Assembly (NCBI RefSeq): GCF_006345805.1
Contig: NW_021836298.1
Span: forward strand, 3,430 to 67,429
Direction: 5' to 3'
Length of the DNA: 64,000 nucleotides
DNA from: Octopus sinensis
Taxonomy: Eukaryota
Positions 38,027-61,351 of the stretch are shown here, piece after piece (within the stretch, counting starts at the first letter, position 1; each line of letters begins with the position of its first letter). Both the position numbers and the translations under genes were made by a program. Under the pieces are notes generated by a model. It searched no databases. It was not told where the DNA came from and saw only the letters and a list, made by a program, of their open reading frames with translations.

Positions 38027-38229
38027 TTACATCATATGAGGTAGATATTCGAGTGCATCGAAACACTCACATTTCTCAAGAGCTTCTCTGAGTGTTCTGT
38101 GTGTTCGTGTCTCTGGATCACAAGTTGTAAACCATCTCCGCAGCATCTGGAAGCTCTGTTCAACGGTGTCAAGAGGATTGTCATTTTTGATGATTTCCAA
38201 TCGAACAGTTTTAATTCCTAATTCTCTTC
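38027..38229 (-). CDS. Terminal death-domain exon [67 protein letters not shown]
   Basis: tgttttgcag acceptor; LG..I..D.P....EQ..QML..W....T...L..AL death-domain pattern; 3'UTR and AATAAA shared with the paralogue. Confidence 0.88.
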
Positions 38230-41200
38230 CTGCAAAACATACAACAGTTAGAAATAACTGCAACAACATTAACAATATTATAAAAGATGTTTACTGTAGT
38301 TTGTTATAAATACAACAAAGGCATTATGTCCATAGAGGAATGAGAAGTAGTTAAGAAACATAAAATATATAAGACATCGTTCTCTATTTCTAAGAACGCT
38401 GATTAAATAATAACAAAGAGGTTGAAGTACAGGATGGAAATTGTGAAGATTTTAAAGAGAATTAATTGTAAATTACATTTGAGAATATGGTAAAGAGATG
38501 GCAGGAGAAGTGTTTGTGGGGGCAAAAGTATATGAGAACCTAGAAAATCAACATAGACGACCAACAGTCAAACCATTTGATCCATCTGTCCATTCCACTG
38601 GTCAATATTCCTGGGAGGGTTTGGGGGTAGAGGCCTCCTCCATAGGGTCCCATCAGATGCAACCATCGTAAGACGTTTTGGTTGGTTTCCTAAGCGCAAA
38701 CAACTAAGACTATGAATATGATCCAACCATTTCGTTTTTAGTCTACCCCTAGGTCTTCTACTCCATTGGTTTTGTTTTAGGAATCTCTCCTTTAATTTGT
38801 TCTTGCGACATTCCGATCATATGTTTGTAGTACCAGAGATGTGAACATGAAGAGACTCCCATATTTCTGAACTATACATTCTATTGAGTAATGTTACTCT
38901 AAAGACCCATAAATGGAATCTCATTCTTACTGTTTGATAACATCCTATGATCAATGACTAAAGCATATCACGATTTAGAAATATCTTGATTGATTTTCTG
39001 GATTGAACTCTCAGAAAAAACTAGGTACATCTGAACTAATTAAAATACGAAAAGACAAGATACAAAAATGACCTCAACGTATTATATTTTGTCCATCTGT
39101 TTGGCTTTCACTTTTCAATTCCTTCAATTTTTTTCCGATTGATTTCAAATTTCATGTATTGATGTAGAGTTGTATGCTAATTATGGAAATGAAATTCACT
39201 TTCCCCATAATTTAATAAATAAAAACTTAACAGCTTTTAAATCTACAAATTTTGTATTGTACTTTAGTCACTCGAAATCCACAAATGCATTGGCACCCGT
39301 TTCCATGGTATCAAGCGAAGGTGTTGTGTAGCCTCCTTACTCGTCTGTTACCTTTTATTCTTGCTTTTACACGTCTGTTGTTGTCACTCTGAAACTTCCC
39401 CTTCTAAGGTTGGCTCGTGTCTCTGCGAGTTTATTTGGCACAGGGATTACGGAAATTGGCAGGAATTCTGGTTTTATTATCCCCACATAATCCCAAATAA
39501 CTTTCTGTATTTTGGGGGATTTTCAGAAACTGATTGCAAATTTGTGTTCTATACATGGGAATTATAAAATTATGAAGTAAAAATCTGTGTGAGTTAAGTT
39601 AAGTTAATTTTTTGGCTCAAAAGCAAAAAGCAAGGCCATGTAGGGGGACATGTAGTTAAGTACAGGGTGGTGTTCATGTAAAGAGTTCAGGCCACTTGAG
39701 GTCAAGGGAGACTTTGAACAAAGCGGTCGTCGGCATCTTCACCATCTTGTCTGTTAATGGCGATTTAGCTGTTGTTTTTAGCACATCTCCTGACCACCTG
39801 ACATCTTCCTCGTTTCCTTGCTACTATGACATGTATTGATGTTTTTCAATATTTTTCCTCCCATAAACTCATTAAATGGAATGATCATGCAGTGAAGGGT
39901 GGTCCGTTGCTGGGATTTAGGCAAAGAATTCGGACAAACTCTGTATTTCAAACTCTGATTTGAAAAACAAAAAAATTGAAAAAGTGTATAAATTTTAGGA
40001 TGTATGAAGGTAAGGGATTAATAAATGTTTTGAAATAAGTTTGCTTAATCATAGGAATTCCCGTGAGTAGGACTCAAATTTGCAAACATTTTCTCAAAAC
40101 TCCAAAAAATAAAAAAAAAATATATAGGTTCAAATGGGTGCTTAAATCAGAATTTTCTGTTACAAACTCCTAAACTGCGTCGCAAACTTTCGTTATTTTT
40201 TCGTAATTCAACATTCCCATTTAGTTTATATTGTTTTTTTCTCGTTTTTCTAATTTTTCTCATACCTGTTATGATATTTCACATAAGTTAATTGATTAAA
40301 ACTTATTAAAACTTCCGTCGTTGAATTTTTTGTCGTCGTAATGTCGTCATCTGTTGTCGCTGTTTTGTGATCCCGCTCAAAATGCTTTCTTCCAAATCCT
40401 GTTTTCTCATTGGGTAAAAATTATCAAAATTTGATCTGCTAACATTTTAAGAAATTTTTCTGGAACAAGTGAATAAGATCAGGTTCAGTATGAAACAATA
40501 TATCAATAGTTTCCCCTTGATTTTCAAATTTCAAAAGTTAAAGCAAAAAAAAAAAGAATGATACGCATTTCTTTCACGGTGTCAATGCCATGATTTAGAG
40601 AGAAATCAATAATGGATCGGTGTTATGATAAAGCTAGAAATGAGAAGAGATTTAGTTAGTAGGAAAGAAGGCAGGACCCACCAACCTCTACGTTATTCAC
40701 CTACATAGAATAAGCCACTATATGTGGGTGATGCCTGGTACACTACTAGATGGACACTGGACAGTGGAGAGGCTACATGTCTCCCAATATACACAGAAAG
40801 CTATGAGAAAGGACCATTTAATGATGCCGTCCTGTACTCTCAAATATGTCCCCTATCTATTATTATCAAAACTGCTGACATCGGTGGATATTTTCTGAGT
40901 CACTTTAAAGAATCACTTTAAAGCTAACCTTTCAATTGGATAGAAGGAATGAGATCTTTTTTTCAGTCTGAAACTTATATAAATCAATTAGGTACTCTTA
41001 TTTTATACTCACCGACTTGTTGCCATTTTCCCCCTAAATTTTGTGCGACATCTTGGAGAAACTTTTCATCTAACACTGGAGACTCTGAAATAAATATTCC
41101 GAAATTAGATACTTAAAGTTAATTTTCTTTATTAATAATCTATATTTATTATTGTGAGAAATTCCTATCATAATTGGTCAACTGGTGACCGCTATGGTTT

Positions 41201-44200
41201 CGGTCAGCATTATACTTTCCACGGAGGCCTCATATAATAGCTCAATACTAAGGCCCACATCAAAATACACTAACCTTTCTAAATTTCCTATCTCTATTAC
41301 GGCTTCTTAAATAGTGTAATAATGTTACTATTATCTCATTTAATTATCACAGTATTTTGTTAGTTTTGTATTTCTTCCATTACATCTGTGCGAAATCTAT
41401 GACATGGCATTGGCCTCTGGCGTCTAGACTTCACTAACCAACTCTCTTCTCATTTGCTTAATTCCAATATTAACCCAGTTTGCCGTCAAACATGCAGCCA
41501 CAAACACATGGCACCTCACACCAAGTAGAATAGACATGCATCTGCTAACGTTGCTGTTGGTAATCTTTAACTAACATCACGGTTCACCATCTGATTCAGG
41601 AAATATTTGAAGACTCCTTCTTAAAGCAGCTTTTTTAAAAGCGAGAGAAATGATTAGTTCTACACAGGTGGAACACAAACTGTCCACATCACTGTACACC
41701 GGAATGTTATGTAACTCAAGAAATATTTGCAAATATTTGAACGCCATACATTCTCCATAATAAGGGCATTTTGTTCAGGTGGGTAATGGTTAGATTCTGC
41801 ACAGGGGGAGCAAAAGCATGATGTGTCTTAAAACCCTGTACACCGTCTCACACATTATTGTATGAAAACATTTGAAAAGTATTCGAGGAGGTACCTGATA
41901 AAAACTGGAATTTTGCAATATTATTTTATTCACTTAGCTTTACACGCTTACACTTTTACAGCCCTCAAAGTATTATCCATTTGAAGCAATCCTCGGCCCA
42001 GAAGCTATAATATGAAGCTGTAATATTATACTCACCAACTGGCTTTGTTGTAGAGGATGTAGGCTCTGACACCTTCGAGAATTTCCCATGCGTTGGAGCC
42101 TCTGAAAAAATATGTTCAAGTTTCAGGCATTAAAGTTTCGTTATCATTCATAATCTATATTTTATTGTTGTGAGATATTCTTATCGTCCATAATCAACTG
42201 GTGAGCACTATTTTTTCCACCAACATTTCTATACTTTTTACTGTGATCCTATTAAATGCGCCAAATGTAGGACCGTGTAATAACCCAATATATAGGTCTA
42301 CTACTAAATAGACTGACCTTCCTAAATCTCCTCGCACTATTAAGACATCCTACATAATCTAACACTATTGCACTTATCTCATTTAATAATCACTTGTTAA
42401 CACTGCTAATCTCCTTCTTATATTTAATCTAATCTATGACATGATTGTCCTCTCATCTCTAGACTTCACTAATCAACATTCTTCTCGTTTTCTACTTAAT
42501 TCCATGACAACCAAATTGGTCCTCAAAAATCGGACCACAAAACCATGACACATCGTTTCAGGTAGGATAAACATAACCCCGCTCTCTTTTTTAAAGGTCA
42601 CTGTTGGCAAACTTTAATTTTAACTGACCACATCACACTTCATCAGAATATCATCTGAATAAGGAAATATTTGAAAATATTTCAATGTCATTCATTTTCC
42701 TTAATAAACGACTTTTTTTTCAGGTGAGCAATGATTAGTTCTACAACGGTGGAGAGGTAAGCGATAACAGGTATCCTGAAACACTACTTTTGTACAAAAC
42801 ATCCTTAACAACAAAATCACTGTTCATTATTACAAAGGGGTTATATCCAAATTGAGAACTGACAATTTATTCTGAAGAATATATAAACAAAATCGAACTG
42901 GAAACATGAAATTTTGCATTTTTTTAGTAGTTTTGAATTATCAGTTGTTTTCTGTCCATCTTCAGCTTTGCCATGGTCTCACTACCCCAGTATGTATCAG
43001 TCAACAAGATAGCGTACCACCATCTTTAACTTTTGGTTTGTCTTTAACTTTTGGCATGAGTTCTCCTGCCGTTCGTAACTTCCCTTGCTCCAGCTGACCA
43101 TTCACAAATTATAGACTGCATTACTTATTTGCTTGAAACCACATTCTTGACTAAGTACTAACTCTATGGAGTCTACTAACCAGAACTATTTGCATATCCT
43201 TTTAGTCTCTTGTTAGTATTGTTATGTCAGCCATGAATATCTTTCCGTTGAGCAATTTCTTCTGGACATTCTGTTAATCTAAGTAGCATAACTATAAAGA
43301 TCACCAACCAACTGATATTGTGCAACCTACAGCTATTCCAGATCCAGAACCTGGCAGTCTTTTGTGAACTTTTATCCTATGAAACACATTTTGAAACTGT
43401 TATAGCATCTCATCATCAGATCCTTAATCTCCTCCCATTTATTAAAGAAATTCCTTGTTTCCATCAACAATGTGTGTGGTACAGAACCATAAGCATTAGC
43501 CAGATCAAGCCATACTACATCCGAATCTCTTTTATTCTTCTTTGCTTTTTATATGGCATCCCAGATTTAAAATGCATGTTCTACACACCAGACATTTTCC
43601 GGATTCTAGTCTTCTGGACATTTTCTGTCGTATAACCATTATTTTGCTGACATGTAGCTGATTTCATAGCAAGTACACCCATGTAAATCTTGCCATTCAA
43701 GATTGAAATTGGCTTCAATTGGCCACTTAGTTCTGCATTAACTTACTTTGATGAATAAAATCCTTTTGTCTTGCACCATTCATCAATCAGTCCACCTTTA
43801 TCCCACAACTCTCTAAATAGTAATTAATGCTTATAACACCTGGGCACAACATTTGTACACGTTCTATGGTACACAATCACCTCCCGTTGCAATCTCCGTT
43901 CTTGCCTTCTTCACTAAGCTTTATACTTGTTTCTTGCTGAAATCGCAAAGCTGAAATATTTGATTACTGGTTTCATTGGACATTTCAAACCAAACATGAG
44001 CAGGTAAAGATGACTTCGCTTGGGATCATTGTATATCTGCCGTATATTCTTGTTCACTTCATCTTTAGTGCATTATAATCTCCCCCACTTAACATCGGCA
44101 AAAATATCCTAGTACCATCAGAAGGGTTCTTAAGGAGCTTTTATCTAAGGTGTTCACTATCCTTTCTTCTTTCAACCCGTCCGATGTCTCTTTGAATGTA

Positions 44201-47200
44201 TTTGATTGTATTGTATCATACAGCCTCTATGAAGTTTGAAGAAAGGGAAAGAGACAACGGTTTTCTGAGCAGCAAACCAACGTCTTCCACTTGAAAAAAA
44301 AAATGTTTACTGGATGCAATGATAGATTTATTATCAGTGAAAAACGACAGGGTGTTCATATTTGGAGCGCATTTCATTGTAAGTCTGCCAGATTATGAGC
44401 GACATCAGCTAAAATAACAACAATAACTTGTCAGTAAACATTTAAAAAATATAAAACAAACAAAACCTTTGTCATTACCTCACCTGTTAAACCACAACAT
44501 ATATTATTTGGCTGCTCCAAAAGAGAACCTGAAATCTATTTTGCTTCTAATTTATCCATTTCACCAACCATGCTAACCTGATTGGATACTTTATTAAATG
44601 TCAATAGTATCGATATGTTTAATATGATTAGTTTAATGCTAAAACTTCCCATTGACAGGTAAGCATGGAAGCTGATCTTTATCATTCTGATATCAAAATA
44701 GTTCAGCAGAGAATAAACCTTACAGAAATCAATCAAGTGCTGTTATTTTATACTCACCTACAGGTTCAGCCAGTGTCTGTGTTTCCTTGACTTCAAATGT
44801 TCGATTCACTGAAATGAATATTTCCAAGTTTTAAACATTATAGAAAAATTTCTCTATCTTTATTAATAATCTATATTTTATATCAGAGATTTCTTTCATA
44901 GATAATCAACTGTTGAAGACAATGGTTTTGGTTAGAATGTTTATAGTTTCAACAGGATTACCCTGTAATTTCAATATTTACACTGCCTTCCAAAATTTCC
45001 TTTATCTTTTGAGACAGTCGACATAATCTAACAACTGTGTCATTATTTCATTTAATTATCACTTGATAACACCAATTTTTTATTAGGTTTGTCTTTCCTT
45101 TCTTATATCTGCACTGAACATATGACGTGAAATTGTGCCCTCACTTCTGCCCTTCTCTAACCAACATTATTCTCAGCTTTGCTTAATTCCAATGGCAACC
45201 AGTTTGGTTATCCATGATCTAACCATAAACACATTACACACACCACTTTAAGTGGTAGAATGGAAGTGATTCTGAAGACTCTAGGATATTTCTGACAACC
45301 CTCTTCTATATATCAACCAAACTTCCGTCTCTCCTTTGATGTCTCCTTAATCAATGCGGTGCCTCTGAAGGGGCTGAGAACTCAGTTCAATGAAATCTGA
45401 GGGGACGAAAATGCTTTATAAAATACATCTAATTAGTGTCAAATACGTATACAGAAATGTTCGACAACATAGTGTTTCCTATGAAATGAAGCAAAAATAC
45501 AATACCATCAAAACTTACTGAAACATAGGGACTATAATCACGGTTCGTATGGAGTGGTCTTGTAACAAAGAAAACAGGGTCCTCTTATAGCTCCTGTATA
45601 TTCTTGCTCACTTCATCTTTATTTCGTTATAATCTGCTGCTCTTAGCGGCTGCAAAAAGAATCCTAGCACCGTAAGCAGGGTTCTTAAGGAGCTGCTATC
45701 TAAAGTGTTCACTATCCTTTCTTCTTTCAACCCGTCCGATGTCTCTTTGAATGTATTTGATTGTATTGTATCATACAGCCTCTATGAAGTTTGAAGAAAG
45801 GGAAAGAGACAACGGTTTTCTGAGCAGCAAACGAATGTCTTCCACTTGAATAAAGACAATGTTTACTGGATGCAATGATAGATTTATTATCAGTGAAAAA
45901 TAAGAGGGTGGTCATATTTGGAACTCGTTTCATTGTAAGTCTGCCAGATTATGAGAGACATCAGCTAAAATAACAAGAATATCTTGTCAGTAAACATTTT
46001 TAAAATACAGGCGTAGGAGTGGCTGTGTGGTAAGTATCTTGCTTACGAACTAGATGGTTCTGGGTTCAGTCCCACTGTGTGGCACCTTGGGCAAGTGTCT
46101 TCTTCTATATCTTCGAGCCAACCAAAGCCTTGTGAGTTGCTTTGGTAGACAGGAACTGAAAGAAGCCCGTCGTATGTATGTATGTATGTATGTATGTATG
46201 TGTGTATGTGTTTGTCCTCCCAACATTGCTTGACAACCGGTGCTGGTGTGTTTCCGTCTAGGTAATGCATCGGTTTGGCTAAAGAGACCGATAGAATAAG
46301 TACTAGGCTTACAAAGAATAAGTCCTAGGGTCGATTTGCTCGACTAAAAAGGTGTTGCTCCAGCATGGAGACAGTCTGAAACGAGTTAAAGAGTATAAAA
46401 CAAACAAAACCTTTGTCATTACCTCACCTGTTAAACCACAACATATATTATTTGGCTGTTCCAAAAGAGAACCTGAAATCTATTTTGCTTCTAATTTATC
46501 CATTTCACCAACCGTGCTAACCTGATTGGATACTTTATGAAACGTCAATAGTATCGATATGTTTAATATGATTAGTTTAATGCTAAAACTTCCCATTGAC
46601 AGGTAAGAATGGAAGCTGATCTTTATCATTCTGATATCAAAATAGTTCAGCAGAGAATAAACCTTACAGAAATCAATCAAGTGCTGTTATTTTATACTCA
46701 CCTACAGGTTCAGCCAATGTCTGTGTTTCCTTGACTTCAAATGTTCGATTCACTGAAATGAATATTTCCAAGTTTTAAACATTATAGAAAAATTTCTCTA
46801 TCTTTATTAATAATCTATATTTTATATCAGGGATTCCTTTCATTGATGATCAACTGTTGAAGACAATAATTTTGGTAAGAATGTTTATAGTTTCAACAGG
46901 ATTACCCTGTAATAGTTCAATATTTACACTGCCTTCCAAAATTTCCTTTATCTTTTGAGACATTCGACATAATCTAACAACCGTGTCATTATTTCATTTA
47001 ATTATCACTTGATAACACCAATCTTTTATTAGGTTTGTCTTTCCTTTCTTATATCTGCACTAAACATATGACGTGAAATTGTGCCCTCACTTCTGCCCTT
47101 CTCTAACCAACATTATTCTCAGCTTTGCTTAATTCCAATGGCAACCAGTTTGGTTATCCATGATCTAACCATTAACACATTACACACACCACTTTAAGTT

Positions 47201-50200
47201 GTATAAACACTCAAACCTGATCTCCTTCTTAAACATTACTGCATGTAATGATTAGTTTTCAACTTCCTGCATCACTGTTCACCAGAATGTCAGCTGATGC
47301 ATGAAATGCTTTAAATCACCTTAATAGAGCAGTGTTTATAAAGGTGAGTGAAGATTACTTCTACACAGGTGGAACAGAAAATGATAACAGGTGTCCTCAA
47401 AGAGGATACACTTGCACAAACTTCACTCTACTACAGGTAACTCTTCATCCTTACATTATAGCTGTGAAAAGATCTGAAATGGTAGAATGGAAGTGATTCT
47501 GAAAACTCGAGGATATTTCTGACAACCCTCTTCTATATATCAACCAAACTTTCATCTCTCCTTTGATGTCCCCTTAATGCGGTGCCTCTGAATGGGCTGA
47601 GAACTCAGTTCAATCAAATCTGAGGGGACGAAATGGACATCTCTGTAGAAATATTTACCTGACAGAAAACGGTCGTCCTGATGTCGTAGTTAACAACATT
47701 ACAAGGAATATGAAACCCTGCTCACACCCCATTCCACCATCACTGTTTTACCACATTTGTCACTAATGATCATTGATGTTAACTAATTGAAAATGTTTCT
47801 AAAATGTTTTATAAAATACATCTAATTAGTGTCAAATACGTATACAGAAATGTTCCACAACATAGTGTTTCTTATGAAATGAAGCAAAAACACAATACCA
47901 TCAAAACTTACTGAAACATAGGAACCATAATCACGGTTCGTATGGATGTGGTCATGTAACCAAGGAAAATTGTAAAACTACAGAGAGTAATAAGGTGTAG
48001 AATGTTACTCGAAGATGCTAAGTTCTGTTGAGGTTCTACAATTTGAGAAATGATCTACCAATGAAAAGAAGATTCACAATATACAATATGATATTTAGAG
48101 GCCTCTGAAACTCGTTCCGGGTGTAAAAATCGCGTTTTTGACAATTTTCAACTCGCCAGTAAACCATGTGTCGTATTCAACAATGGATCGAAACTCATTC
48201 TCCAAGATTGTATACATCTACACTTTATTTGTTCAAAATCTCAAATTCTCTTCTTATCTTCTTCATAATTAATTTTATTTTCCAATATGTGCTTTTTAAC
48301 AAAATTGCACAGTTCTCTGACAAAACTTTTATCACACAAGGTTAATAAAAGTGACAGGACCAGCAAGTTCGAGGAGGGAGTACATTGATTACATCGACCC
48401 CAGTACACAACTGGTATTTTCCTATTGACCCTGAAGGGGTGAAAAGGCGAAGTCAACCTCGGCAGAATTTGAAATTAGAACCTAAAGACGGACGAAATGC
48501 AGTTAAGTGCATTAACGATTCTGCCAGGGGTCACCTTATCTATTATTTAATAATATTAAAGCGGCGAACTAGCAGAATCGGTGGCGTGCCGAACAAAATG
48601 CCTAGTGGCGTTTCATCCGTCTTCACGTTCTGAGTTTAAAATTCCACCGAGGTTGTCTTTGCCTTTTATTTTTTCAGGGTAAATAAAATAAGTACCAGTT
48701 TTGTACTGGGGTCGATATACTCGCCTCATTTCCTACCCTGAAAATGATCACACAAGATCAATAAAAGGGCAGATATAAGCCGCCTATTTGGTAAAAAGGA
48801 TCTTATTTTACATATAAAAATTTATATTTTAAATCATATTATTTTCATACTGAAATGCTTATGGTATTAAGGTAAAACTCCTAATTACAATTTGAGATGT
48901 TATTGATTTACAATTCATTGATTACATATTAACAGACGATTATCTAAATAGATCATTATTATACGTTTTGTATTTTTGATTGTAAAAATAACTAGATATA
49001 AACGATGACAACCGCTTCTGGATGAGAGCAGATCCTCAGGGGCCAGCTTATAAAACCTGGCTCTCTGTATCAGGTGCTCAAACCAATCAGATAATGTTTG
49101 GTTAGGGCACCCGACAAGCATTGCTACAGATCGAGGAACGCCGTGGCCGAAGTCATGCGTTGATTGGTGCATGAAATTAATAAATCTTGGTTTTCATCTG
49201 AGAGTTCAATGATACAACCAATGTACCAATCATTTTCATTCGTGTATCCAACATATTTTCAGGACTTTAACTTTGAAATATCTTGCTCAGATGCTGGCCT
49301 CTCCTCACCTAAAAGAGTGAAATTGTCATCAGCTGATATCTTCTTCGTTAGAAGATCAGATCTTGAAGAAGGTACGAAGCGGTGATGGGATCGTGTGCCA
49401 ACTGATTTCACTGAGCTGCTGATTCGTGAAAGCAAATCGAAGCTGTTTTCATTTTGGATGACATCGGCTGCCGACATGTCAAAGAACATTATCTCTGGAA
49501 TGCTTGCACATGCTCAGCCATACATCTTGCAACCTGTGAGAAAATGTCTTTCCTGGTTGCTTGTAGACTTGCTTTAATCAGCAACACATTTCTTCATCCT
49601 ACTGATTCCCTCATATGTCCTTTTTCCACATGACATGGCAAAGAAATACGACTCCGCTTCAAGGCCTTGATCATTCTGATGATGACAGAGATTTGTTTGG
49701 CGTCTCTAGTTCTTGTATTGGTCGGCTGCACCGTCACTGAAGTACAGGAGATGGTTTATGAATGGAAGTTCTGTCTTTATATGCGATATCACCCTCGTAA
49801 TAAAAGCATGCACTATGGTGCTGTCATGTTTCAAACAATCAGATATGACACAGATTGAAGTGCATTGTGGGTTTGAACCAGTCTTATAACAGATCACGAA
49901 TGGATGAATATATTGGCCTGGGAGATGTTCCGATGAAAACCTTGCTCCGAATCCTTCACTACAAAACTATAATTTTCTGCCAAGTCTGACAATACTCTCG
50001 CATGATTTGATGTCAGATCATCTTTCTGATGAAAAAGGAGACTAGTTTGAGCCTTTGCTATGAAATGGGGTTGATGCAGAGTATCAAATACATTTTTAGC
50101 GGTTTGAAGGAAATCATTCACTGGGGAAGTTAGGCACATCAGGAAGGCCCAGTCCACATAAATCCTCGTTACTAAATCCTCTGAGTCAAAATCACGTGAT

Positions 50201-51249
50201 TAAAATATGTCCAACACTTCAGTCCACTCAGCTGGCGAAAATATGTAATTTTACAGCGGACTAAATCAAAATCAAAATCGATCAACATCAATGGAAATTG
50301 TAGCTGTGATACCAGTGCCGGTGGTACGTAAAAGAACCATCCGAACGTGGCCGTTACCAGTGCCGCCCGACTGGCCTCTGTGCCGATGGCACGTAAAAAG
50401 CACCTTCCAATCGTGACCGTTTGCCAGCCTCGTCTGGCACCTGTGCCGGTGGCACGTAAAAAGCACCCACTACATTCACGGAGTGGTTGGCGTTAGGAAG
50501 GGCATCCAGCCGTAGAAACTTTGCCAGATCAGACTGGGCCTGGTGCAGCCTTCTGGCTTGCAGACCCCAGTTGAACCGTCCAACCCATGCTAGCATGGAA
50601 AGCGGACACTAAATGATGATGACTAGCGTCCTATTCATGGAAAAATATATAAGCCGGGGGAACCGGGAAACCAACCCTATGCTTTTTATGATGTAATGTG
50701 GTCTAACATAATTAGGTACAGTTACTTTCTACTCACCAGGTGGTTCTGCCAACATCTGGACTTCCGGTTTTGACGACTTTGGACCCTCTGAAATAAACAA
50801 TTTCATGTTTTAAACACTGTAGAAAAAATTCTTTATCATTATTAATAATCGATATTTTATTATTGTTAGACAATCCTATCATCATTGGTCAACTGGTGAC
50901 CATCATGCTTTTGGAGAGCATTTGTATAATTTCTTGAGTATTACTATGTAACGATTCAAAATTTAGGTCCACAACAGCCTAAACTACACTTAACAACCCT
51001 TCTCTGTCTCTTAAGGCATCCAGCAATTCTAACAATTCTGAAATTATCTCATTTAATTATCACCTAATAACAACAGATTCTCTCTTAGTTTCGTTTTGGT
51101 TTTCTTATGTTTGTTCCAGATCTTTGACAAGACATCGTCATTTCACCTCCAGAGATCTCTAATCAATATTCGTCTCATCTTCTGCTAAGTTCAAATGTCA
51201 ACCAAGTTGCGCATCGAATATCCAACCCCAAACACGAAACACCACTTCA

Positions 51250-51293
<44 letters not shown>

Positions 51294-52577
51294 GTTCTCT
51301 TTGTTATTGGTTACTACTAGTAATCTTTAATCTTAATTACCCACATCACAGTTCTCCAGAATGTAATCAGATGTGGGGAAATATCTGAAGATATTTCAAT
51401 GTCATTCATCCTCCTGAATAAAGCAGGTCGAACAGAAAGTGACATCAGGTCTAACAGGAAGTGATATCTCGTGTCCTAAATTAACACACTACATTCACAC
51501 AAAACCTCTTTAACGACATAAAACTTGTCATCCAAACATTATTGCTGTGAAAATATTTGAAACGGTTCAGAAGAACTGATACTCAGGAATACTAATCTAT
51601 ACATCAATCAAAGTTTCCCACCCTTTTGATGTCCCCTCTCTAATGTTGGTCCCTAAACCCTCAGTTGAGATTTTCTTATTGAGTCTCCTATTTTATAAAG
51701 GCTCCCTCTTATATTCATATAACTGCAGTTGTTTTTAATTATCAGATTCCGAAGATATTGATAAATCATTAATCACTCTAATCACACACAAGATGTCGGT
51801 ATTTACTGATAGAACCTTGGTGATTTATTGGTATTTAGTCACCATTTATAATTCAGTATTCTTTATTATTTTTATGTTGCAGAAATCAACCATCTTGAAG
51901 TGTGACAAGTCTTCTAATTGGACAAGAACAAAGTTTAGTGGGAGTAGTGAGAGACATAATATGACAGAGAAAAAGACACCTGGAACATCTTTTATCAAAA
52001 GTGTGCTTGATTAAGGCAGAACTGGATCTACACAACAGGAAATACAATATTCCACACCATACAGCCCAAGAGACAAACAGACAGATCATACAGTATTCTT
52101 ACCCAAACTATTTTTGCTCGTTATATTCTGTCCACACTTGAGGCATTGTTTAGGTATCTTTTGGGGACAGCATTTCTTACACAGCGAAAGATGTTTACAT
52201 GGAAAGAACGTCTCTGTGGCCACTTCGTCTTCACAAAACACACATCTGAGGAACAAAAACATGAACACATCCCATTAATAACATTCATTTATAACAAATA
52301 TTACATTGCGTGCATATTTACAGTAGAGAATATTATGCGACACCACAATTAAACAATTACATATGGGCGAATTTGTGAGTATATAAATGCAGACCCAGAC
52401 ACACAGACACAGACACAGGCACACACACACACACATACACACACATATATATATATATATAAATGGACACAAATATTAATAAGTATATGTCATGACATTG
52501 ATACATCACAAAAACTGATTTACGCAAAGTGAACAACATATATTCCAGAAATATAATTCACTTATATATATATATAT

Positions 52578-52931: not shown

Positions 52932-53611
52932 ATGTGTGTTTGTGTGTGTGTGTGCGTATATATATATATATATATATATACACGGGGGGAAATAGATATT
53001 CGTAATGTCAAAATTCTTTCTTTATTTAATTTCTAATGAACATAAATGGGATATACCACTATTATATATTTGCATACAGATGCATAAACTAAGAATATGC
53101 GAAAGAAACTAATAAATTATAGTAACTAAGGAATTTATATACAATTATAAATATTTAGGGGTGAAAAAAGTATTCGTAAAGAATATAGATAACTGATAAT
53201 TCTGATTTAATACTTCGTAGCATAACCATTATTCAGTTCCACTTCAACCAATCTCTTCTTGTAGTTCTTCACCAATGACTCGCATGTTTCTTTAGGAATT
53301 TTTTCCTATTCTTCTTGACAAATTTTCTTCAAATCTGTAATGCATGTTGGGGCTCTTGAATTTCAGTTTTCAAATAACGCCACAAATTTTCAATGGGGTT
53401 CAAGTCAGGTGACAGGCTTGGCCATTACAATAATTTTATATTGTGATTGACAATCCATATTTGGTAGACTTCACCGTGTGCTTAGGGCCGTTTCCCTGTT
53501 GTAAAACCCACCCTTCACAAAGCTGGAGCTTTTCAACAGAGTCCCATAAATTATTGTTCAAAATATTTTGGTACATCTCTGCATTCATTCTACCACACAC
53601 ACACACACGCA

Positions 53612-53657
<46 letters not shown>

Positions 53658-53819
53658 AATGGACACAAATATTAATAAATATATGTCATAACATTGATAC
53701 ATCACAAAAAGTGATTTACGCAAAGTGAACAACATATATTCCAGAAATATAATTCATTTATATACATACACATACACACACACATACATACATACATACA
53801 TACATACATACATACATCA

Positions 53820-54188: not shown

Positions 54189-55214
54189 ATATATAGACAT
54201 ACATACATACATACATACGTACGTACGTACGTACGTACGTACATACATGCATACATACATGCATACATATAACACTTGATTGTATCTAATCTGTTTTAGA
54301 AGTCGTCTATACTTAGACATTTGACTTTGAATTTTATGGATGGACAGATAGGACACAATTCCTACAGCTTCATGTATGGCTGATCCATGCCACAAAACAG
54401 GTCATTGTTCTAAATTAGAGTAATGACTTTAGATTTATATACGATATGTGTGTACATAACCAGGGAATTATTTTCAAAAGTGATGAGTTGAATGCAGTAA
54501 ATGTCATGTTTCCATCTGCCATCACTGCACCACAAACTTCAGATTGATCTCAGGCCATTACAAGGTACATTGTTATTCTATGACTGAAAGACTGTGAGAA
54601 ATAGTTCAACTACCTGATTGGTCCCTTCAGTGCCTGATCCATGCGTCTTCCTCCACCATGGCTGTGGAATAAATAGCAAGTTACATTTCGTTACACAGAG
54701 ACACTCTAATTTACAGTAGAGAATATTATGCGACGCCACAATTAAACAATTACATATGGGCGAATTTGTGAGTATATAAATGCAGATACAGACACACAGA
54801 CACAGACACAGACACACAGACACAGACACACACACACACACACATACACACATATATATATATATAAATGGACACAAATATTAATAAGTATATGTCATGA
54901 CATTGATACATCACAAAAACTGATTTACACAAAGTGAACAACATATATTCCAGAAATATAATTCACTTATATATATATGTGTGTGTGTGTGTCCGAGTCA
55001 GTCGCCATGATAGATTGTTAGCCGCTACACACATTTTTTTCTCTCCTTGTTCCTATCCTTGTTTTTTTTTTCCGTGTCCCTTTCTGTAGAAGAGCGAAGG
55101 CTCGAAACGTAAAAGACTTTTTCTATTCCTTCAATACCACCTGTCATCGTCTTTTGTTTTTTTCGTAAACTCTCCCTATATATATATATATAATAATATA
55201 TATATATATATATG

Positions 55215-55282: not shown

Positions 55283-55315
<33 letters not shown>

Positions 55316-56836: not shown

Positions 56837-56932
<96 letters not shown>

Positions 56933-59900
56933 TACATGTATGTATCTATGTATGCATGTATAATACGTATGTATGTATGTATGTATTCGTGTATGTACGC
57001 TCATTGTATGTGTTTGTAGGCGATTTTCTCAGGATAGCTCACATGGACATGACTGGCTGGGACAGAGAAGACAGAGGAATAATCTGTTGGTAGAGAGATA
57101 AATTCCATCACTTCACTATTTACTTGTACATTTTCTCATTGGTCCCAAATCTTTAAAATAGGGAATTGAGAGAGGTGGGTGGGGATTTTAGGAGAGGTAT
57201 AACAGTCAACGCAACCAATCATTTGAATGTAATCAAAATAGTGTCCTTTCTTTTAATTAGCTTAACATCTGCATATTGTTTATTGTTCTTCTTACTGTTG
57301 TTGTCTAACCTTTCATTAAGCTACTAAGACAGTATAATGTATCAGTAGAATTAAAACAATATAAACATTTAAACATGGTTATATACAAAATAGAAAATGT
57401 AATGGTTTATCTTGTCATTGCCAGTGAATACTTACTGCGGTGGGAATAACATATTTAACATCTTTTTTAAATTTTCCTTTTTTATTAGGTCCAATGGTGT
57501 TCTACCACTTTTGTTTTTACAGTAAAAGTTGGCCCCGTGGTGGGCTAGGTAGCTGGCAACTACCACACCAGAGCACCTTTCTTCGTTTCCCAGTTTCAGC
57601 TCTACGCAGAACTACAAATGATGAAATATAAAATGATGAGTTAAAGATTACACAAACATATACTAAAGATGCCCCAAATTACACAACAGTTCAACTACAT
57701 TTACACATAGTTTTGTTTCTCCAGTGATTAAACTATTCACACAGCGTTGATTTCTTACATCATCTCTTAGTTGAGTCCACTTTTCATTATCATTTGTTTT
57801 ACTTTACGTTCTACATTAAGACAAAAATTATGATCATTATATTGACAAAACGCACATTAGTGGTCAACGTTATTGCTTAACAATGATATTTAATGAGTAA
57901 ATATTTACTTGCCAATCACAAATGTCACAAACTATTCAATAAAAACACAATATAAAGTTATTATAACATCAAGTCAAATATACACAATATAAGGACAGAA
58001 ATGTCACAATAATGAAAGACAACAAACCAACAAGAACCTATCTCTACAACTGGCTTGATAAAGCCAAATGGCCACAGCAAGAGAAATACTTACGGAAGAG
58101 TATTGTACATATAAGTACTAGCTTAAGGTGACCCGCTCTACGCGTGGGTGAGGGTGTGATTGTTACTTTCTGTTGCTTCCTTTGTTTCTTATCGCCATAT
58201 TCACCCTCTTTGTTCCTCTCTCCTTTCTCTCTCACTTCCTCACTCTCTTACTCTTCCTTTATCTCGGACTCTCCCTCACTTTCTCTTGCTTTTTATCTTT
58301 CTCTATCTCTCTATCTTCCATTTATGAAAAATTAGATTTCCGTGCTTAAATTACAAATCTTCTACTTTACCATGTTGAAAATTTGATTGAAATCGGGCAA
58401 AAGGTGTCCAATCTAAACCCCCAATTGTCCCCCAAAATCAATAAAATCCCTATTTTCACACCAAAACGACCACAGTAGCGCCCCAAAAGTCTCTCAAACA
58501 ATTTCTCACCGCAAGTTACCCCCTCTTTTAAATTGTAATCCCCTTCCAGGCCCAATTACACATCTTTTTACATAAAAATCCAATTTGTATCATCGTTCGC
58601 CTTCTTCATTTGATAGATTAGAAATACATACCCGGTCTTGTTCGGGATTAAAATAGTTATTATTGTTTTACTAGTTTTGGTATAATAACCCGATTTCATT
58701 CGGGTCTAAACGGGCCACATTTTAAAAGATGAGGGATTTTGCCCTAGAGTCCATGCCTTTCAATTGAGCAAATTCGAAGTTCCAATACAAACTCGCTAGC
58801 ACTTTTAACATAGGTGTGTTTATTTTTAGCACAATCCAACCACATATGCACACAGTATATATATAAATTAACACAATATATCTGTTTAATAATATCTGTT
58901 ATGATTGTGCGATGGAGGTGGGCGATATTAATTCACCGTTCTAAAAGACCTGTGGCGAGAATATTTAAACTTTTGCGGTTGTCATCGCTTTCTGTCTATA
59001 GATACAGACAGATGTACAGTGAGAGAGGTGGTGGAAGAAAGAGTGACAGAGAGACGTCGTTATAGAGGGATCAAAAAATCACTCTTTTTGCCATAGCAAC
59101 CACATCTTATAGCTTGCGAATTTTAACCATCGCGGGTCTCATTCTCACCACGCATTTAGTATCCTTGCCAATTTGCAGCTCGATCCTTGCCTCGGTTGGC
59201 TGCCATTAACCTCCAAAGCAAATGTGCATAAAATTTTCGTCAAAGGACTGTTTTATAGATATGAATAACACCACAAATAATATAAGTTATACCAGAAAAG
59301 AGAACAGCAACAACATAGCAAGGCCTTCAGACATAACAACTAAATCAACACCACATAGACATATCCACGCAGATCAATAATGTTTCTATAATTAAGTGGA
59401 TTGGAGAGAAAAACAGGGTATATAAGGCATCGGATTTTGTGCGCAAGAGAGAAGTCTACCATGGTATGGTTATGTGATGCATATGGATGAAGATAGCTTC
59501 ATCAAGAAGGGGTGATCTCTCATTGTGGAGGGAATGTGTGGAGGGGGTAGACCCAGAAAGACGTGCAATAATGTGGTGAGAAAGGACTGTCAGACGTTGG
59601 GCCTCACAGAGGGGATGAAATGGGAGCGATACTTTTGGCAGTCTGCTGTACTTGAGATAATATGCCAAGCTAAGTCGTCATTGTCCTTGCATACTGTCAT
59701 GACCCCTGTATCATTCTTCGTCTGAGATATCCTAATCTTGTGGGATCATGGGTGCTGATGCTTCGGAAAAATCACCCATGCTGGTGTCACATACAAATAT
59801 CCGTGTCGGTGCTGCAGAAAAGCACGCAGTACATTATGTAAATTGGGTGGCATTAGGAAGGACGTCCAACTATCGAAACAATGCGAAAAGAGATATGGAG

Positions 59901-61042: not shown

Positions 61043-61078
<36 letters not shown>

Positions 61079-61351
61079 ACCCACACACAAACACACACAC
61101 ACACACACACACACATAGTCACAAACAATGTGAAAACTTACCTGATCTAACATGGTCATGTGCTCCACCTCAGAATTAAATTCTTTGGTTGCTAACGCCA
61201 GGTGCAGGCAATTATCTCCTCCATAGTCGAGAGCATTTACATTCGCACCCCTGGCTATCAGCCTCTGAATTATTCCGAGGTGACCGTTCGAAACAGCTTC
61301 AAGCAATGGTGTCCTATATTTTTTGTTCACAATTTCTAAATTCACCGAATC
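38027..61351 (-). CDS. Spliced gene encoding an ankyrin-repeat / RING-HC / linker / death-domain protein (Mind bomb-like ANK-RING half plus DD); 5' exons not found in the window
   Basis: Nine GT-AG exons: 61142-61351, 57436-57611, 52103-52245, 50737-50787, 46702-46752, 44758-44808, 42036-42101, 41013-41084, 38027-38229. They total 1023 nt, phases are consistent (0,0,2,1,1,1,1,1,1), there is no internal stop, and they give 340 aa plus TAA. AATAAA lies at 37760-37765 (minus). Confidence 0.85.
38570..38960 (-). mobile_element. Old RTE 3' remnant
   Basis: Degenerate RRPRGR.K..W motif. Confidence 0.5.
39592..39755 (-). mobile_element. Short 3' fragment of the same CR1 family
   Basis: Reverse complement of about 30115-30265, including the 3'UTR. 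Confidence 0.85.
41013..41084 (-). CDS. First death-domain exon (E)[23 protein letters not shown]
   Basis: 72 nt, phase 1-1; L..VA..LG..W...G is the start of a death-domain fold. Confidence 0.85.
42036..42101 (-). CDS. 66-nt phase 1-1 linker exon (E)[21 protein letters not shown]
   Basis: ttttttcag acceptor, gtgagt donor. Confidence 0.75.
43150..44300 (-). mobile_element. Hero-like (restriction-like-endonuclease clade) non-LTR remnant; part duplicated at about 45595-45850
   Basis: GCVEH..IWDAI..AK....[15 protein letters not shown] and PISILNGKI motifs. Confidence 0.7.
44758..44808 (-). CDS. 51-nt phase 1-1 linker exon (V)[16 protein letters not shown], copy 1
   Basis: Same splice sites as copy 2; lies in a recent tandem duplication. 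Confidence 0.72.
46008..46394 (+). mobile_element. SINE family B inserted in one copy of a tandem duplication
   Basis: Empty site visible at about 44445-44455 in the other copy. Confidence 0.88.
46702..46752 (-). CDS. 51-nt phase 1-1 linker exon (V)[16 protein letters not shown], copy 2
   Basis: ttcatttcag acceptor, gtgagt donor; one synonymous difference from copy 1. Confidence 0.72.
48990..50160 (-). mobile_element. DNA transposase relic (SDxAENY / [11 protein letters not shown] / HGK..DG-type family; Sola-like, superfamily uncertain)
   Basis: Frameshifted ORFs 49894-50157, 49706-49897, 49259-49489 with [53 protein letters not shown]. Confidence 0.7.
50262..50623 (+). mobile_element. SINE-like family C (GGAAGGGCATCCAGC core, AACCCATGCTAGCATGGAAAGCGGAC-(ATG)n tail)
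   Basis: Other copies ~6505-6705(+), 7563-7960(-), 15296-15590(-), ~59745-60000(+). Confidence 0.8.
50737..50787 (-). CDS. 51-nt phase 1-1 linker exon (E)[16 protein letters not shown]
   Basis: tttatttcag acceptor, gtgagt donor, frame-preserving. Confidence 0.75.
52103..52245 (-). CDS. RING-HC (C3HC4) exon CVFC..PCKH..CKKC..CLKC
   Basis: Acceptor ttcctcag, donor gtaaga, 143 nt; Cys/His spacing of MIB/IAP-type RING fingers. Confidence 0.92.
52729..52768 (+). ncRNA. Minimal type I hammerhead, same family, core CUGUAGA
   Basis: CUUU-CUGUAGA-A-GAGCGAAGGCUC-GAAA-CGU-A-AAAG; solo tail 52643-52827 ending at (TA)n. Confidence 0.72.
52981..53595 (-). mobile_element. Duplicated terminal 0.6 kb of the same Tc1 element
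   Basis: Near-identical to 55316-55931. Confidence 0.85.
53849..54091 (+). mobile_element. RTE-type LINE 3' fragment
   Basis: RWAGHIA...WT...EWYPR..KRPPGRP..RW. Confidence 0.8.
55078..55117 (+). ncRNA. Minimal type I hammerhead, duplicate of the 52.7-kb copy
   Basis: Identical motif inside the local segmental duplication; solo tail 54991-55176. Confidence 0.72.
55316..56818 (-). mobile_element. Full-length Tc1 (DD34E-like) element with ~210-bp TIRs and a dead transposase
   Basis: TA flanks; TIRs 55316-~55525 and ~56607-56818; [42 protein letters not shown]; internal stops. Confidence 0.88.
57436..57611 (-). CDS. Last ankyrin-region exon ([58 protein letters not shown])
   Basis: Acceptor tttcatcatttgtag, donor gtaagt, 176 nt, phase 0 to 2; homologous to plus-strand exon 16445-16577. 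Confidence 0.9.
58670..59070 (-). mobile_element. Non-autonomous Helitron-like element
   Basis: CCCGaatgaaatCGGG hairpin then CTAGT on the minus strand. Confidence 0.55.
59455..59680 (+). mobile_element. RTE 3' fragment, same family as 63631-63831
   Basis: WYG.V..MD...GRP.KT pattern and nucleotide similarity. Confidence 0.7.
61142..61351 (-). CDS. Ankyrin-repeat exon ([70 protein letters not shown])
   Basis: Acceptor ttttacctccacaaag, donor gtaagt, 210 nt; TPLxxA..GH and G.NCLHLA ankyrin motifs. Confidence 0.92.

What the first reader, a model, noticed from the sequence alone, without database searches (positions are those of the whole stretch)
38027..61351. Ankyrin-RING-death domain E3 ligase: an unusual architecture in a locally expanded family
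Seen: an intact spliced frame with ANK repeats, a C3HC4 RING, a P/S/T/E/K-rich linker and a C-terminal DD. The paralogue suggests the protein starts almost directly at the ankyrins (ATG 5265), although an upstream exon cannot be excluded. Established: Mind bomb has ANK followed by RINGs but N-terminal MZM/REP domains and no DD; DDs nucleate signalling complexes (MyD88/IRAK, RIPK1, FADD, IMD) in which RING ligases such as IAPs ubiquitinate components. Inference: a lineage-specific fusion of sensor (ANK), ligase (RING) and adaptor (DD) acting in innate immune or cell-death signalling, likely hidden under generic MIB2-like annotation.
Basis: partly seen in the sequence, partly recalled or inferred. 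Interest (0 to 1): 0.78.

Follow-up and report, generated by a model that had tools for sequence, protein, structure and literature searches.

The report
Octopus-only ankyrin–RING–death-domain gene family
The window holds the 3' part of an Octopus sinensis gene from a large family found only in octopuses, descended from Mind-bomb-type ligases, that joins ankyrin repeats, a RING finger and a death domain; the combination suggests a role in immune or cell-death signalling, which nobody has tested.

Summary
It contains RefSeq isoforms X1 and X2 of O. sinensis LOC115232124 exactly. Pfam scores Ank, zf-C3HC4_3 and Death above threshold. AlphaFold and Foldseek confirm a six-helix death domain closest to RIPK1, ankyrin-G and FADD, and the linker is disordered.

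Corrections:
- The gene is cut at its 5' end. Exon A opens at an acceptor site, and window base 64000 is the end of the scaffold. Full-length relatives have four more ANK exons.
- The '+' strand paralogue (5265-18874) is a decayed pseudogene.
- The RING is the homologue of the internal RING1 of Mind-bomb-type ANK-RING-RING proteins. The death domain replaces the terminal RING, so ligase activity is plausible but unproven.

Two database searches found every RING+DD relative in Octopus only, spread over many loci and named MIB2-like and other generic names.

New findings:
- The linker is built from decayed tandem copies of the first death-domain exon.
- Paralogues are exon-level mosaics, with 73% identity in the 5' half and 89-96% in the 3' half against one paralogue.
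- dN/dS is about 1.

The immune or cell-death function is inference only. I rate this a new variant of a known kind, of moderate interest.

The parts
61142..61351 (-). Exon A. It encodes one canonical ANK repeat and the start of the atypical last repeat. It begins at a phase-0 acceptor (no ATG). RefSeq starts translation at the internal ATG 61159.
   Evidence: Closest paralogue exon is in P0002, 94% identical.
57436..57611 (-). Exon B. It encodes the insertion-bearing last ANK repeat and the 'PLDLI...LFPP' lead-in to the RING.
   Evidence: Colinear with Octopus ANK-RING-RING proteins.
54614..54661 (-). Alternative 48-nt exon ([15 protein letters not shown]), included in isoforms X1, X6 and X7.
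   Evidence: The same exon occurs in O. vulgaris P0010 and O. sinensis P0013/P0015.
52103..52245 (-). Exon C. It encodes a C3HC4 RING of the IAP/MIB type: CVFC-x11-CKH-x3-CKKC-x8-CLKC.
   Evidence: Pfam PF13920, 28.8 bits. PDB sequence hits CGRRF1, cIAP2/1 and XIAP. AF2 pLDDT about 75.
50737..50787 (-). Linker exon L1 (51 nt, phase 1-1).
46702..46752 (-). Linker exon L2a (51 nt, phase 1-1). It lies in one arm of the 1.9-kb tandem duplication.
44758..44808 (-). Linker exon L2b (51 nt, phase 1-1). It is the twin of L2a.
42036..42101 (-). Linker exon L3 (66 nt, phase 1-1).
41013..41084 (-). Exon D1. It encodes death-domain helices 1-2 ([23 protein letters not shown]), phase 1-1, and is paralogous to the linker exons.
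38027..38229 (-). Exon D2. It encodes death-domain helices 3-6 and the stop codon (TAA 38029-38027).
42144..51169 (-). 9-kb intronic block carrying L1, L2a and L2b. It is absent from the otherwise 92-96% identical 3' half of the chromosomal paralogue L003.
5265..18874 (+). Pseudogene paralogue, tail-to-tail with the target gene. Exon 1 (5265-5342) has a 1-bp frameshift in the A7 run 5286-5292. A degenerate ANK exon lies at about 7154-7408. The exon-A homologue is spread over three reading frames (10650-10828). The exon-B homologue is spread over two frames (16448-16641). The RING exon is at 17015-17149 and the D2 exon at 18668-18874. Two ANK exons are missing and D1 is not recognisable.

Best explanation
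SHOWN. The window carries the 3' two-thirds of Octopus sinensis LOC115232124, on unplaced scaffold VCDQ01005861.1. The gene belongs to a family found only in Octopus. A full-length member has an N-terminal cap, about six to seven ankyrin repeats, one internal C3HC4 RING, a disordered linker of variable length and a C-terminal death domain.

The family descends from a Mind-bomb-type ANK-RING-RING gene. It kept ANK and RING1, and a linker plus death domain stand where the terminal RING was. The linker is made of decayed tandem duplicates of the first death-domain exon. All of these exons are phase 1-1, so they can be skipped or included freely, and RefSeq lists isoforms X1, X2, X6 and X7 that differ in which of them they include. 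Paralogues are mosaics of ANK, RING and DD exon types produced by recombination.

INFERRED MECHANISM. The death domain brings the protein into death-domain oligomers of the kind formed by MyD88/IRAK, RIPK1/FADD or IMD. Clustering there brings the RINGs together, so they ubiquitinate complex members or clients bound by the ANK solenoid. This would tune immune or cell-death signalling. It would do directly what mammalian MIB2 does through its MZM domain when it binds oligomeric RIPK1 and ubiquitinates it, including within the RIPK1 death domain. Different ANK, RING and DD combinations and different linker lengths would give different specificities.

The anatomy and ancestry are firm. The ligase activity and the pathway are not.
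For: - Gene model and identity with RefSeq isoforms.
- Domains: Pfam. DD closest to RIPK1 DD (E=2e-7) and ankyrin-3 DD (E=9e-7) by sequence. AF2 DD pLDDT 73-93, linker below 30. Foldseek finds ankyrin-G, RAIDD, RIPK1 and FADD DDs with TM 0.74-0.79, and IDOL, cIAP2 and XIAP RINGs.
- Full-length paralogue P0008: AF2 mean pLDDT 85.9, with ANK solenoid 1-280, RING 285-330, disordered 332-378 and DD 382-459.
- Ancestry: exons A-C are colinear with ANK-RING1 of Octopus ANK-RING-RING proteins, 43% identity, E=2e-50.
- RING constraint: the Zn ligands are conserved in all 35 distinct family RINGs that matched a Zn-ligand regular expression (so this is partly by construction; His in 31, Asp in 4), and A5 gives six Cys invariant in 31 members. 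A hydrophobic residue sits at C1+2 in 34 of 35.
- Restriction to Octopus: an exhaustive HMMER search of a RING-DD profile over 1.84e9 representatives found about 29 RING+DD clusters. Every one that could be named (26 of 29) is Octopus; P0129, P0134 and P0147 returned no name. In a second search, 60 of 60 hits were Octopus.
- Linker origin: (74% column identity including the flanking introns), and the sequences.
- Mosaicism.
- Precedent from MIB2-RIPK1: PMC5912950.
Against: - No expression, interaction or activity data exist for any family member, and no paper on the family was found.
- The retained RING is the internal RING1 homologue. It lacks the C-terminal tail of IAP/MIB terminal RINGs.
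- This copy has Leu instead of Pro after Cys7 and Gly instead of the linchpin Arg after Cys8.
- dN/dS is about 1.0 for RING-L3-DD against the closest chromosomal paralogue (19 non-synonymous and 5 synonymous changes). There is therefore no signal of purifying selection on this copy.
- The 5' ANK exons of this copy are not in the assembly.
- Some death domains, such as those of ankyrins, do not form signalling oligomers.
Confidence: 0.5

Rival explanations
1. The protein is a non-catalytic adaptor or decoy. The RING is only a structural zinc module, as internal MIB RINGs may be. The protein acts through ANK and DD binding alone, for example by capping or sequestering death-domain assemblies. 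It would be a regulator rather than a ligase.
For: - The RING is homologous to the internal RING1 of MIB-type proteins, and the terminal RING is lost.
- MIB2 activity depends on the C-terminal RING tail Phe (F>A mutant, PMC5912950).
- This copy lacks the Pro after C7 and the linchpin Arg. The linchpin position varies across the family: R/K in 19 of 35 RINGs, G/Q/L/P/H in 16 of 35.
Against: - All eight Zn ligands and the hydrophobic E2-contact position are conserved across divergent paralogues.
- Pfam PF13920 scores above threshold.
- Many active RINGs are internal and monomeric.
Confidence: 0.25
2. This particular copy is a non-functional fragment. It could be a recent partial duplicate, an incipient pseudogene or an uncollapsed haplotig on an unplaced scaffold, even if the family as a whole is functional.
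For: - No start codon and no upstream ANK exons occur within the scaffold.
- RefSeq can only start at an internal Met, which gives a protein with no complete ANK repeat.
- dN/dS is about 1 against L003.
- The neighbour in the same window is a dead copy.
- The family is scattered over many 17-73 kb scaffolds.
Against: - All nine exons, plus the alternative one, keep an open frame and canonical splice sites over 23 kb. The neighbouring pseudogene has at least four frameshifts and missing exons.
- In O. vulgaris the four upstream exons lie up to about 26 kb upstream of exon A. Only 2.6 kb is available here, so their absence is expected from scaffold truncation alone.
- RefSeq gives several isoforms for the locus (X1, X2, X6 and X7 were seen).
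Confidence: 0.2
3. The gene is simply the octopus orthologue of Mind bomb 2 (Notch-ligand endocytosis), and the 'death domain' is an annotation artefact.
For: RefSeq names many family members MIB2-like. The ANK-RING1 region is homologous to MIB-type proteins. MIB1 ANK is the first natural protein in the fold search.
Against: - Full-length members start directly at the ANK cap and have no MIB_HERC2, ZZ or REP domains.
- There is only one RING.
- The DD is supported by Pfam, by PDB sequence search and by fold.
- There are dozens of paralogues, confined to Octopus.
Confidence: 0.03

Closest known systems
Mind bomb 1/2 (MIB1, MIB2), and the truncated Octopus ANK-RING-RING proteins (e.g. XP_052830990.1 = P0197, and P0207)
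   Same: The last ANK repeats, with their unusual insertion, and the first zf-C3HC4_3 RING are colinear with the target: 43% identity over 178 aa to P0207 and P0197. The ANK fold matches MIB1 ANK (8v0e). MIB2 acts on a death-domain protein: it binds oligomeric RIPK1 and ubiquitinates it, including within the DD (PMC5912950).
   Different: The family has no MZM or REP N-terminal region. It has a single RING. The terminal RING, which in MIB2 is the one whose C-terminal Phe is needed for activity, is replaced by a disordered linker and a death domain. The family is a large Octopus-specific expansion rather than one or two conserved genes.
cIAP1/2, and the mollusc IAPs with BIR-DD-RING architecture (oyster BIRC11-type; PMC8917759)
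   Same: They share the same RING subtype (zf-C3HC4_3; the best PDB RING hits include cIAP2, cIAP1 and XIAP). They combine a death-fold domain with a RING in one polypeptide. They are lineage-specifically expanded in molluscs.
   Different: The Octopus family has no BIR domains. The domain order is reversed: here the RING comes before the DD, whereas in IAPs the RING is C-terminal. The death-fold domain here is a true DD rather than a CARD.
ANK-plus-DD proteins: ankyrins (ANK-ZU5-UPA-DD), NF-kB p100/p105 (RHD-ANK-DD), ANKDD1A/B and DAPK1 (from my own knowledge of these families)
   Same: They have ankyrin repeats N-terminal to a C-terminal death domain. Ankyrin-3 and ankyrin-G DDs are among the closest solved DDs (E=9e-7; TM 0.78, rmsd 1.4 A).
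   Different: None of them carries a RING between the ANK and the DD. The ANK-RING part of this family is MIB-derived rather than ankyrin- or IkB-like. Orthology of the DD to any of these proteins was not tested.
RIPK1 death domain
   Same: It is the best sequence match of the DD among solved structures (E=2e-7, about 30% identity over 86 residues). Foldseek TM is 0.74-0.82.
   Different: The Octopus protein has no kinase domain or RHIM. Whether its DD forms RIPK1-like filaments is unknown.

Membership tests
RING-type E3 ligase (zf-C3HC4_3, IAP/MIB subtype) | Eight zinc ligands with C3HC4 spacing, and a Pfam PF13920 score above the gathering threshold | tested here: met
   The RING reads CVFC-x11-CKH-x3-CKKC-x8-CLKC. 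PF13920 scores 28.8 bits against a cut-off of 27. The ligands are conserved in 35 of 35 family RINGs.
RING-type E3 ligase (zf-C3HC4_3, IAP/MIB subtype) | E2-binding and activating residues: a hydrophobic residue at C1+2, Pro after C7, and a linchpin Arg/Lys after C8 | tested here: inconclusive
   Phe is present at C1+2. After C7 there is Leu rather than Pro, and after C8 there is Gly rather than Arg. Paralogues such as P0001 have CPMCR.
RING-type E3 ligase (zf-C3HC4_3, IAP/MIB subtype) | RING at the extreme C-terminus, with a dimerising and ubiquitin-priming tail | tested here: not met
   The RING spans residues 129-172 of 340 and is followed by the linker and the DD.
RING-type E3 ligase (zf-C3HC4_3, IAP/MIB subtype) | E2-dependent ubiquitin transfer | not testable with these tools
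   This needs a biochemical assay.
Death domain (DD subfamily of the death fold) | Sequence match to the DD profile | tested here: met
   PF00531 scores 39 bits against a cut-off of 22.6, over residues 257-336. RIPK1, ankyrin-3, Fas, FADD and TRADD DDs are hit in the PDB.
Death domain (DD subfamily of the death fold) | Six-helix antiparallel bundle | tested here: met
   AF2 predicts helices 256-264, 267-276, 281-290, 295-309, 317-326 and 330-333 with pLDDT 73-93. Foldseek TM to solved DDs is 0.74-0.85.
Death domain (DD subfamily of the death fold) | Homotypic DD-DD oligomerisation | not testable with these tools
   No interaction data are available.
Mind bomb (MIB1/MIB2) | N-terminal MZM (MIB/HERC2-ZZ-MIB/HERC2) and REP regions | tested here: not met
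   Full-length paralogues (P0001, P0002, P0004, P0005, P0008) begin at the ANK cap and show no such Pfam domains. The target's own N-terminus lies off the scaffold.
Mind bomb (MIB1/MIB2) | ANK domain followed by a homologous RING1 | tested here: met
   The target aligns colinearly with P0207 and P0197 at 43% identity and with P0244 at 25%.
Mind bomb (MIB1/MIB2) | C-terminal catalytic RING (RING2 or RING3) | tested here: not met
   A linker and DD stand in its place. P0197 and P0207 keep it.
IAP (BIRC) | At least one BIR domain | tested here: not met
   No BIR hit appeared in the Pfam scans of the target or of full-length paralogues.

The most novel reading that the evidence does not exclude
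The ANK-RING-DD genes could form an octopus-specific, combinatorially diversified innate-immune repertoire. Recombination would shuffle the ANK (recognition), RING and DD (output) exon modules between paralogues. Free splicing of symmetric linker exons, themselves born from decayed death-domain exons, would further vary each product. This would be a cephalopod counterpart of the TRIM, NLR or death-fold expansions seen in other marine invertebrates.
Probability: 0.2. Interest if true: 0.75.

Novelty: new variant of a known kind. Interest (0 to 1): 0.5.

Why it matters
Cephalopods have been described as poor in lineage-specific expansions of death-fold adaptor proteins compared with bivalves, echinoderms or amphioxus. 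That statement was made for TRADD-N domains in PMC8195603. Here there is a sizeable Octopus-restricted expansion: about 29 clusters at 50% identity, spread over many chromosomes and scaffolds. Each member fuses a recognition solenoid, a RING and a death domain. The family is hidden under half a dozen misleading automatic names.

If the family is functional, it gives octopus immunology a concrete set of candidate signalling or effector genes. It is also a clean example of three evolutionary processes:
- a domain swap, in which the terminal RING was replaced by a DD;
- the birth of a disordered linker from duplicated domain-coding exons;
- exon-module mosaicism among paralogues.

For genome annotation, it shows that this locus is truncated by the assembly and that its neighbour is a pseudogene.

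Tried and rejected
- **Upstream ANK exons in 61352-64000.** tblastn with 47 family proteins found none. The explanation is that the window ends at the scaffold end.
- **Missing 5' half on another scaffold.** I looked for it among the hits. P0044 and P0045 are 3'-truncated models that read through the exon-A donor into the (TG)n intron. They are only 83-84% identical in exon A, so they are not the same gene.
- **Paralogue locus look-ups.** The look-up of encoding contigs failed for P0003, P0001, P0132 and P0123, which are not the longest isoforms on record. It worked for P0121, P0018 and P0005.
- **Whole-protein PDB sequence search.** It was swamped by DARPins and other ANK proteins, so the DD and RING were searched separately.
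- **Literature.** Five searches found no paper on this architecture or on octopus 'MIB2-like' genes.
- **MIB2 orthologue and IAP readings.** I rejected both. See the membership tests.
- **Mosaic as an annotation artefact.** I considered that the mosaic pattern might come from chimeric gene models. I rejected this for the window against L003, because introns show the same 73% versus 89-96% break.
- **Retroelement ORFs.** Pfam did not recognise the RT-like ORFs at 10912-12908. The Penelope-like assignment rests only on weak GIY-YIG hits.

Full report
**Where the window comes from**

A protein search with the concatenated candidate exons returned Octopus proteins only. RefSeq isoforms X1 and X2 of 'uncharacterized protein LOC115232124 [Octopus sinensis]' map at 100% identity onto the window. 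The locus look-up places the gene on unplaced scaffold VCDQ01005861.1 (67,429 bp, assembly GCA_006345805.1). Window coordinate plus 3429 gives the scaffold coordinate. The reverse complement of the window end is identical to the scaffold end over 35,974 bases, so window base 64000 is the last base of the scaffold.

**Checking the observation**

On the minus strand I defined nine constitutive exons and one alternative exon, all with AG acceptors and GT donors:
- A 61351-61142
- B 57611-57436
- alternative exon 54661-54614
- C 52245-52103
- L1 50787-50737, L2a 46752-46702, L2b 44808-44758, L3 42101-42036
- D1 41084-41013
- D2 38229-38027

XP_036356145.1 and XP_029657840.2 are exact substrings from residue 65.

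Pfam scores the following:
- Ank/Ank_4 at residues 13-55
- zf-C3HC4_3 at residues 129-172 (28.8 bits, cut-off 27)
- Death at residues 257-336 (39 bits, cut-off 22.6)

The death domain alone finds RIPK1 DD (E=2e-7), ankyrin-3 DD (9e-7), and Fas, FADD and TRADD among solved structures. The RING region finds CGRRF1, cIAP2, cIAP1 and XIAP.

AlphaFold2 on a 26-sequence family alignment gives a six-helix bundle at 256-333 (pLDDT 73-93), a RING at about 75, and a linker (178-251) below 30. Foldseek matches the ankyrin-G DD (TM 0.78, rmsd 1.4 A), RAIDD, RIPK1 and FADD DDs, and also IDOL, cIAP2 and XIAP RINGs.

Exon A opens at a phase-0 acceptor with no in-frame ATG before residue 65. RefSeq therefore starts at MTMLDQ and predicts a protein with almost no ANK.

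Full-length relatives (P0002 448 aa, P0004 423 aa, P0008 466 aa) have 140-190 more N-terminal residues. In O. vulgaris the four exons that encode them lie up to about 26 kb upstream of the exon-A homologue (L002). Here only 2.6 kb remains before the scaffold ends. tblastn with 47 family proteins finds nothing in 61352-64000.

AlphaFold2 of the full-length paralogue P0008 (mean pLDDT 85.9) shows the family architecture:
- an N-terminal cap and six to seven ANK repeats (1-280, pLDDT above 90)
- RING (285-330)
- disordered linker (332-378)
- DD (382-459)

**The local paralogue is a pseudogene**

The '+' strand copy lies tail-to-tail with the target.

Its first exon does begin at ATG 5265 and resembles family N-termini: MDINEIMKK / NGDIEAVKIFITEHPDE against MDSIFTKIITNDVKGLKTLIEEKPGQ in P0008. 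However, a 1-bp frameshift in an A7 run (5286-5292) breaks it.

Other lesions:
- The exon-A homologue is spread over three frames, with a roughly 12-residue deletion (10650-10828).
- The exon-B homologue is spread over two frames (16448-16641).
- The preceding ANK exon is degenerate.
- Two ANK exons are missing.
- D1 is not recognisable.

A retroelement sits in its intron (10849-12964).

**Distribution of the family**

A profile of the RING-to-DD region (alignment A1, ten paralogues) was searched with HMMER against 1.84 billion cluster representatives. It gave 113 hits at E<=1e-10. With my own RING, DD and ANK HMMs, about 29 representatives carry RING plus DD, and 20 of those also show ANK. 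Every one that could be named (26 of 29) is O. sinensis, O. vulgaris or O. bimaculoides: 20 proteins were looked up by name, of which 18 are RING+DD representatives, others were named, and several of the remainder were named in a second profile search in which 60 of 60 hits at E<=1e-10 were Octopus. P0129, P0134 and P0147 did not come back with a name.

The next best hits are DD-only proteins, such as multi-DD proteins of Acanthaster and Gadus.

Members lie on many chromosomes and scaffolds. One dense cluster sits on a roughly 12-Mb scaffold in O. vulgaris and O. bimaculoides (accessions CAJ1099217 to CAJ1099363). In O. sinensis, members lie on many 17-73 kb unplaced scaffolds.

The automatic names given to members include MIB2-like, MIB1-like, 'ankyrin repeat protein RF_0381', 'PSMD10-like', 'PP6 ankyrin subunit B-like', 'ankyrin-3-like' and 'secG-like'.

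One caveat applies. I could not verify which other cephalopod proteomes are in the libraries.

**Ancestry**

Residues 1-178 (exons A-C) align colinearly, at 43% identity (E=2e-50), with Octopus proteins that have ANK repeats followed by two zf-C3HC4_3 RINGs and nothing else (P0207, P0197 = XP_052830990.1). They align at 25% with a three-RING MIB-like protein. The match runs through the unusual insertion-bearing last ANK repeat into the first RING.

The family is therefore a derivative of the C-terminal half of a Mind-bomb-type gene. It retains RING1, and a linker plus DD stand where the terminal RING was. This matters for function. In mammalian MIB2, mutating the C-terminal Phe of the RING tail (F>A) abolishes E3 activity (PMC5912950).

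Across the 35 distinct family RINGs that matched a Zn-ligand regular expression and are followed by a DD:
- the Zn ligands are present in all (partly by construction, since the expression required them; His in 31, Asp in 4), and alignment A5 independently gives six Cys invariant in 31 members
- C1+2 is hydrophobic in 34
- Pro follows C7 in only 23
- the linchpin position is R/K in only 19

The window copy has CLKCG. The RING is constrained as a zinc module. Its ligase competence is open.

**New observations on gene structure**

1. *Linker exons derive from D1.* The four linker exons and D1 are all phase 1-1, and they share 'tttcag' and 'gtgagta' borders. About 100 nt of upstream intron and 30 nt of downstream intron align at 74% mean column identity. 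A further 400-650 bp of upstream intron is shared at about 65%. L2a and L2b lie in a 1.9-kb tandem duplication that is 90-97% identical. At protein level there is a chain of resemblance: D1 [23 protein letters not shown]; the paralogue linker exon APKFEDRCVQTEATCQELGAASQAI; RPIFEDKEVQTVEEPR; and L2 [16 protein letters not shown] (sequences). O. bimaculoides P0030 still carries an intact extra D1-like exon in its linker. The disordered linker is thus made of decayed duplicates of the first DD exon. Their symmetry explains the many isoforms, such as X1-X7 here and up to X22 at other loci.

2. *Paralogues are exon-level mosaics.* P0002 matches the target at 94%, 88% and 94% in exon A, exon B and the RING, but at only 49-54% in the DD. 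P0005 shows the reverse pattern: 59% and 52% in exons A and B, against 92% in the RING and 88-100% in the DD. This is not an annotation artefact. Against the chromosomal P0005 locus (L003, CM016859.1), DNA identity including introns is 73% around exons A and B. It jumps to 89-96% from about 55.0 kb through the 3' flank. The 9-kb L1-L2a-L2b block (51169-42144) is absent from L003.

3. *No sign of purifying selection on this copy.* Over RING-L3-D1-D2 the two genes differ at 19 non-synonymous and 5 synonymous sites, giving dN/dS of about 1.0. Exon divergence (5%) equals intron divergence. The numbers are small. The result is compatible with relaxed constraint or with mixed purifying and diversifying selection.

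**Mechanism**

Shown: the domain content, order, fold, disorder, ancestry and distribution.

Inferred: the DD brings the protein into death-domain oligomers. Clustering juxtaposes the RINGs. ANK-bound clients or complex members are then ubiquitinated. The precedent is MIB2, which binds oligomeric RIPK1 through its MZM region and ubiquitinates it, including within the RIPK1 DD, to restrain cell death (PMC5912950). In this family the MZM region is absent and a RIPK1-like DD could supply the targeting directly. Death-fold plus RING combinations are also known in cIAP1/2 and in oyster BIR-DD-RING IAPs (PMC8917759).

Rivals, detailed in the structured fields:
- a non-catalytic adaptor or decoy
- a non-functional fragment at this particular locus
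- a plain MIB2 orthologue (rejected)

**Novelty**

No paper describing this architecture or these octopus genes was found in five full-text searches. All the parts are known domain types, and ANK-RING, ANK-DD and death-fold-RING combinations all exist elsewhere. I rate it a new variant of a known kind. It is interesting mainly as an Octopus-specific expansion with unusual exon-level evolution, and as a counter-example to the view that cephalopods lack expansions of death-fold adaptors (PMC8195603).

Interest is 0.5. It would be higher if immune induction, ligase activity or ANK-surface diversifying selection were shown.

Noticed in passing
window 40976-51260 (minus strand): The four linker exons and the first death-domain exon are paralogous units. 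They share the same phase, the same splice borders and homologous flanking introns. The disordered linker was therefore born from decayed tandem duplicates of a domain-coding exon. L2a and L2b sit in a 1.9-kb tandem duplication (44032-45574 against 45586-47968) that is 90-97% identical.
   Followed up: yes
window 37000-57945 against L003 (O. sinensis CM016859.1: 41,535,326-41,577,698): There is a sharp similarity break between paralogues. The 5' half, including introns, is 73% identical. The 3' half, including introns and the 3' flank, is 89-96% identical. This indicates recombination or gene conversion. A 9-kb block (51169-42144) is present only in the window copy.
   Followed up: yes
window 10849-12964 (+), and 22297-22743 (+): Retroelement ORFs sit in the pseudogene's intron. 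There are RT-like ORFs that Pfam does not recognise, followed by a weak GIY-YIG match (19.4 bits). A second GIY-YIG ORF (26.6 bits) lies at 22297-22743. Together these suggest Penelope-like elements.
   Followed up: partly
window 2288-3603 (-): A LINE-type reverse transcriptase fragment (Pfam RVT_1, 95.9 bits).
   Followed up: partly
window 53439-53753, 55835-55990 and 56187-56405 (-): Tc1/mariner-like transposase remnants lie in the introns of the target gene. One has a Sleeping Beauty-type HTH (27 bits). Two are near-identical DDE-region fragments ('[32 protein letters not shown]').
   Followed up: partly
window 25879-26584, 27519-29259 and 34677-35417: Long strand-skewed low-complexity tracts and satellites: (AGAA)n of about 700 bp; a 171-bp satellite in 3.4 copies at 96% identity; GA-rich 137-195-bp repeats; and (TC)n of about 740 bp. 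These explain the extreme GC and AT skews in the composition profile.
   Followed up: partly
window 61020-61135 (-), and proteins P0044/P0045 from other O. sinensis scaffolds: A (TG)n microsatellite lies just after the exon-A donor. RefSeq models on other small scaffolds read through the same donor into the same repeat ('[14 protein letters not shown]...'). This suggests that these paralogue models are cut short in the same intron as here, consistent with fragmented assembly of the family.
   Followed up: partly
family proteins P0011, P0018, P0020 and P0306: A subset of paralogues has Asp in place of the RING's single His ligand (PCGD instead of PC[KG]H). Two clearly different DD sequence types and at least three RING types also circulate in the family.
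   Followed up: partly
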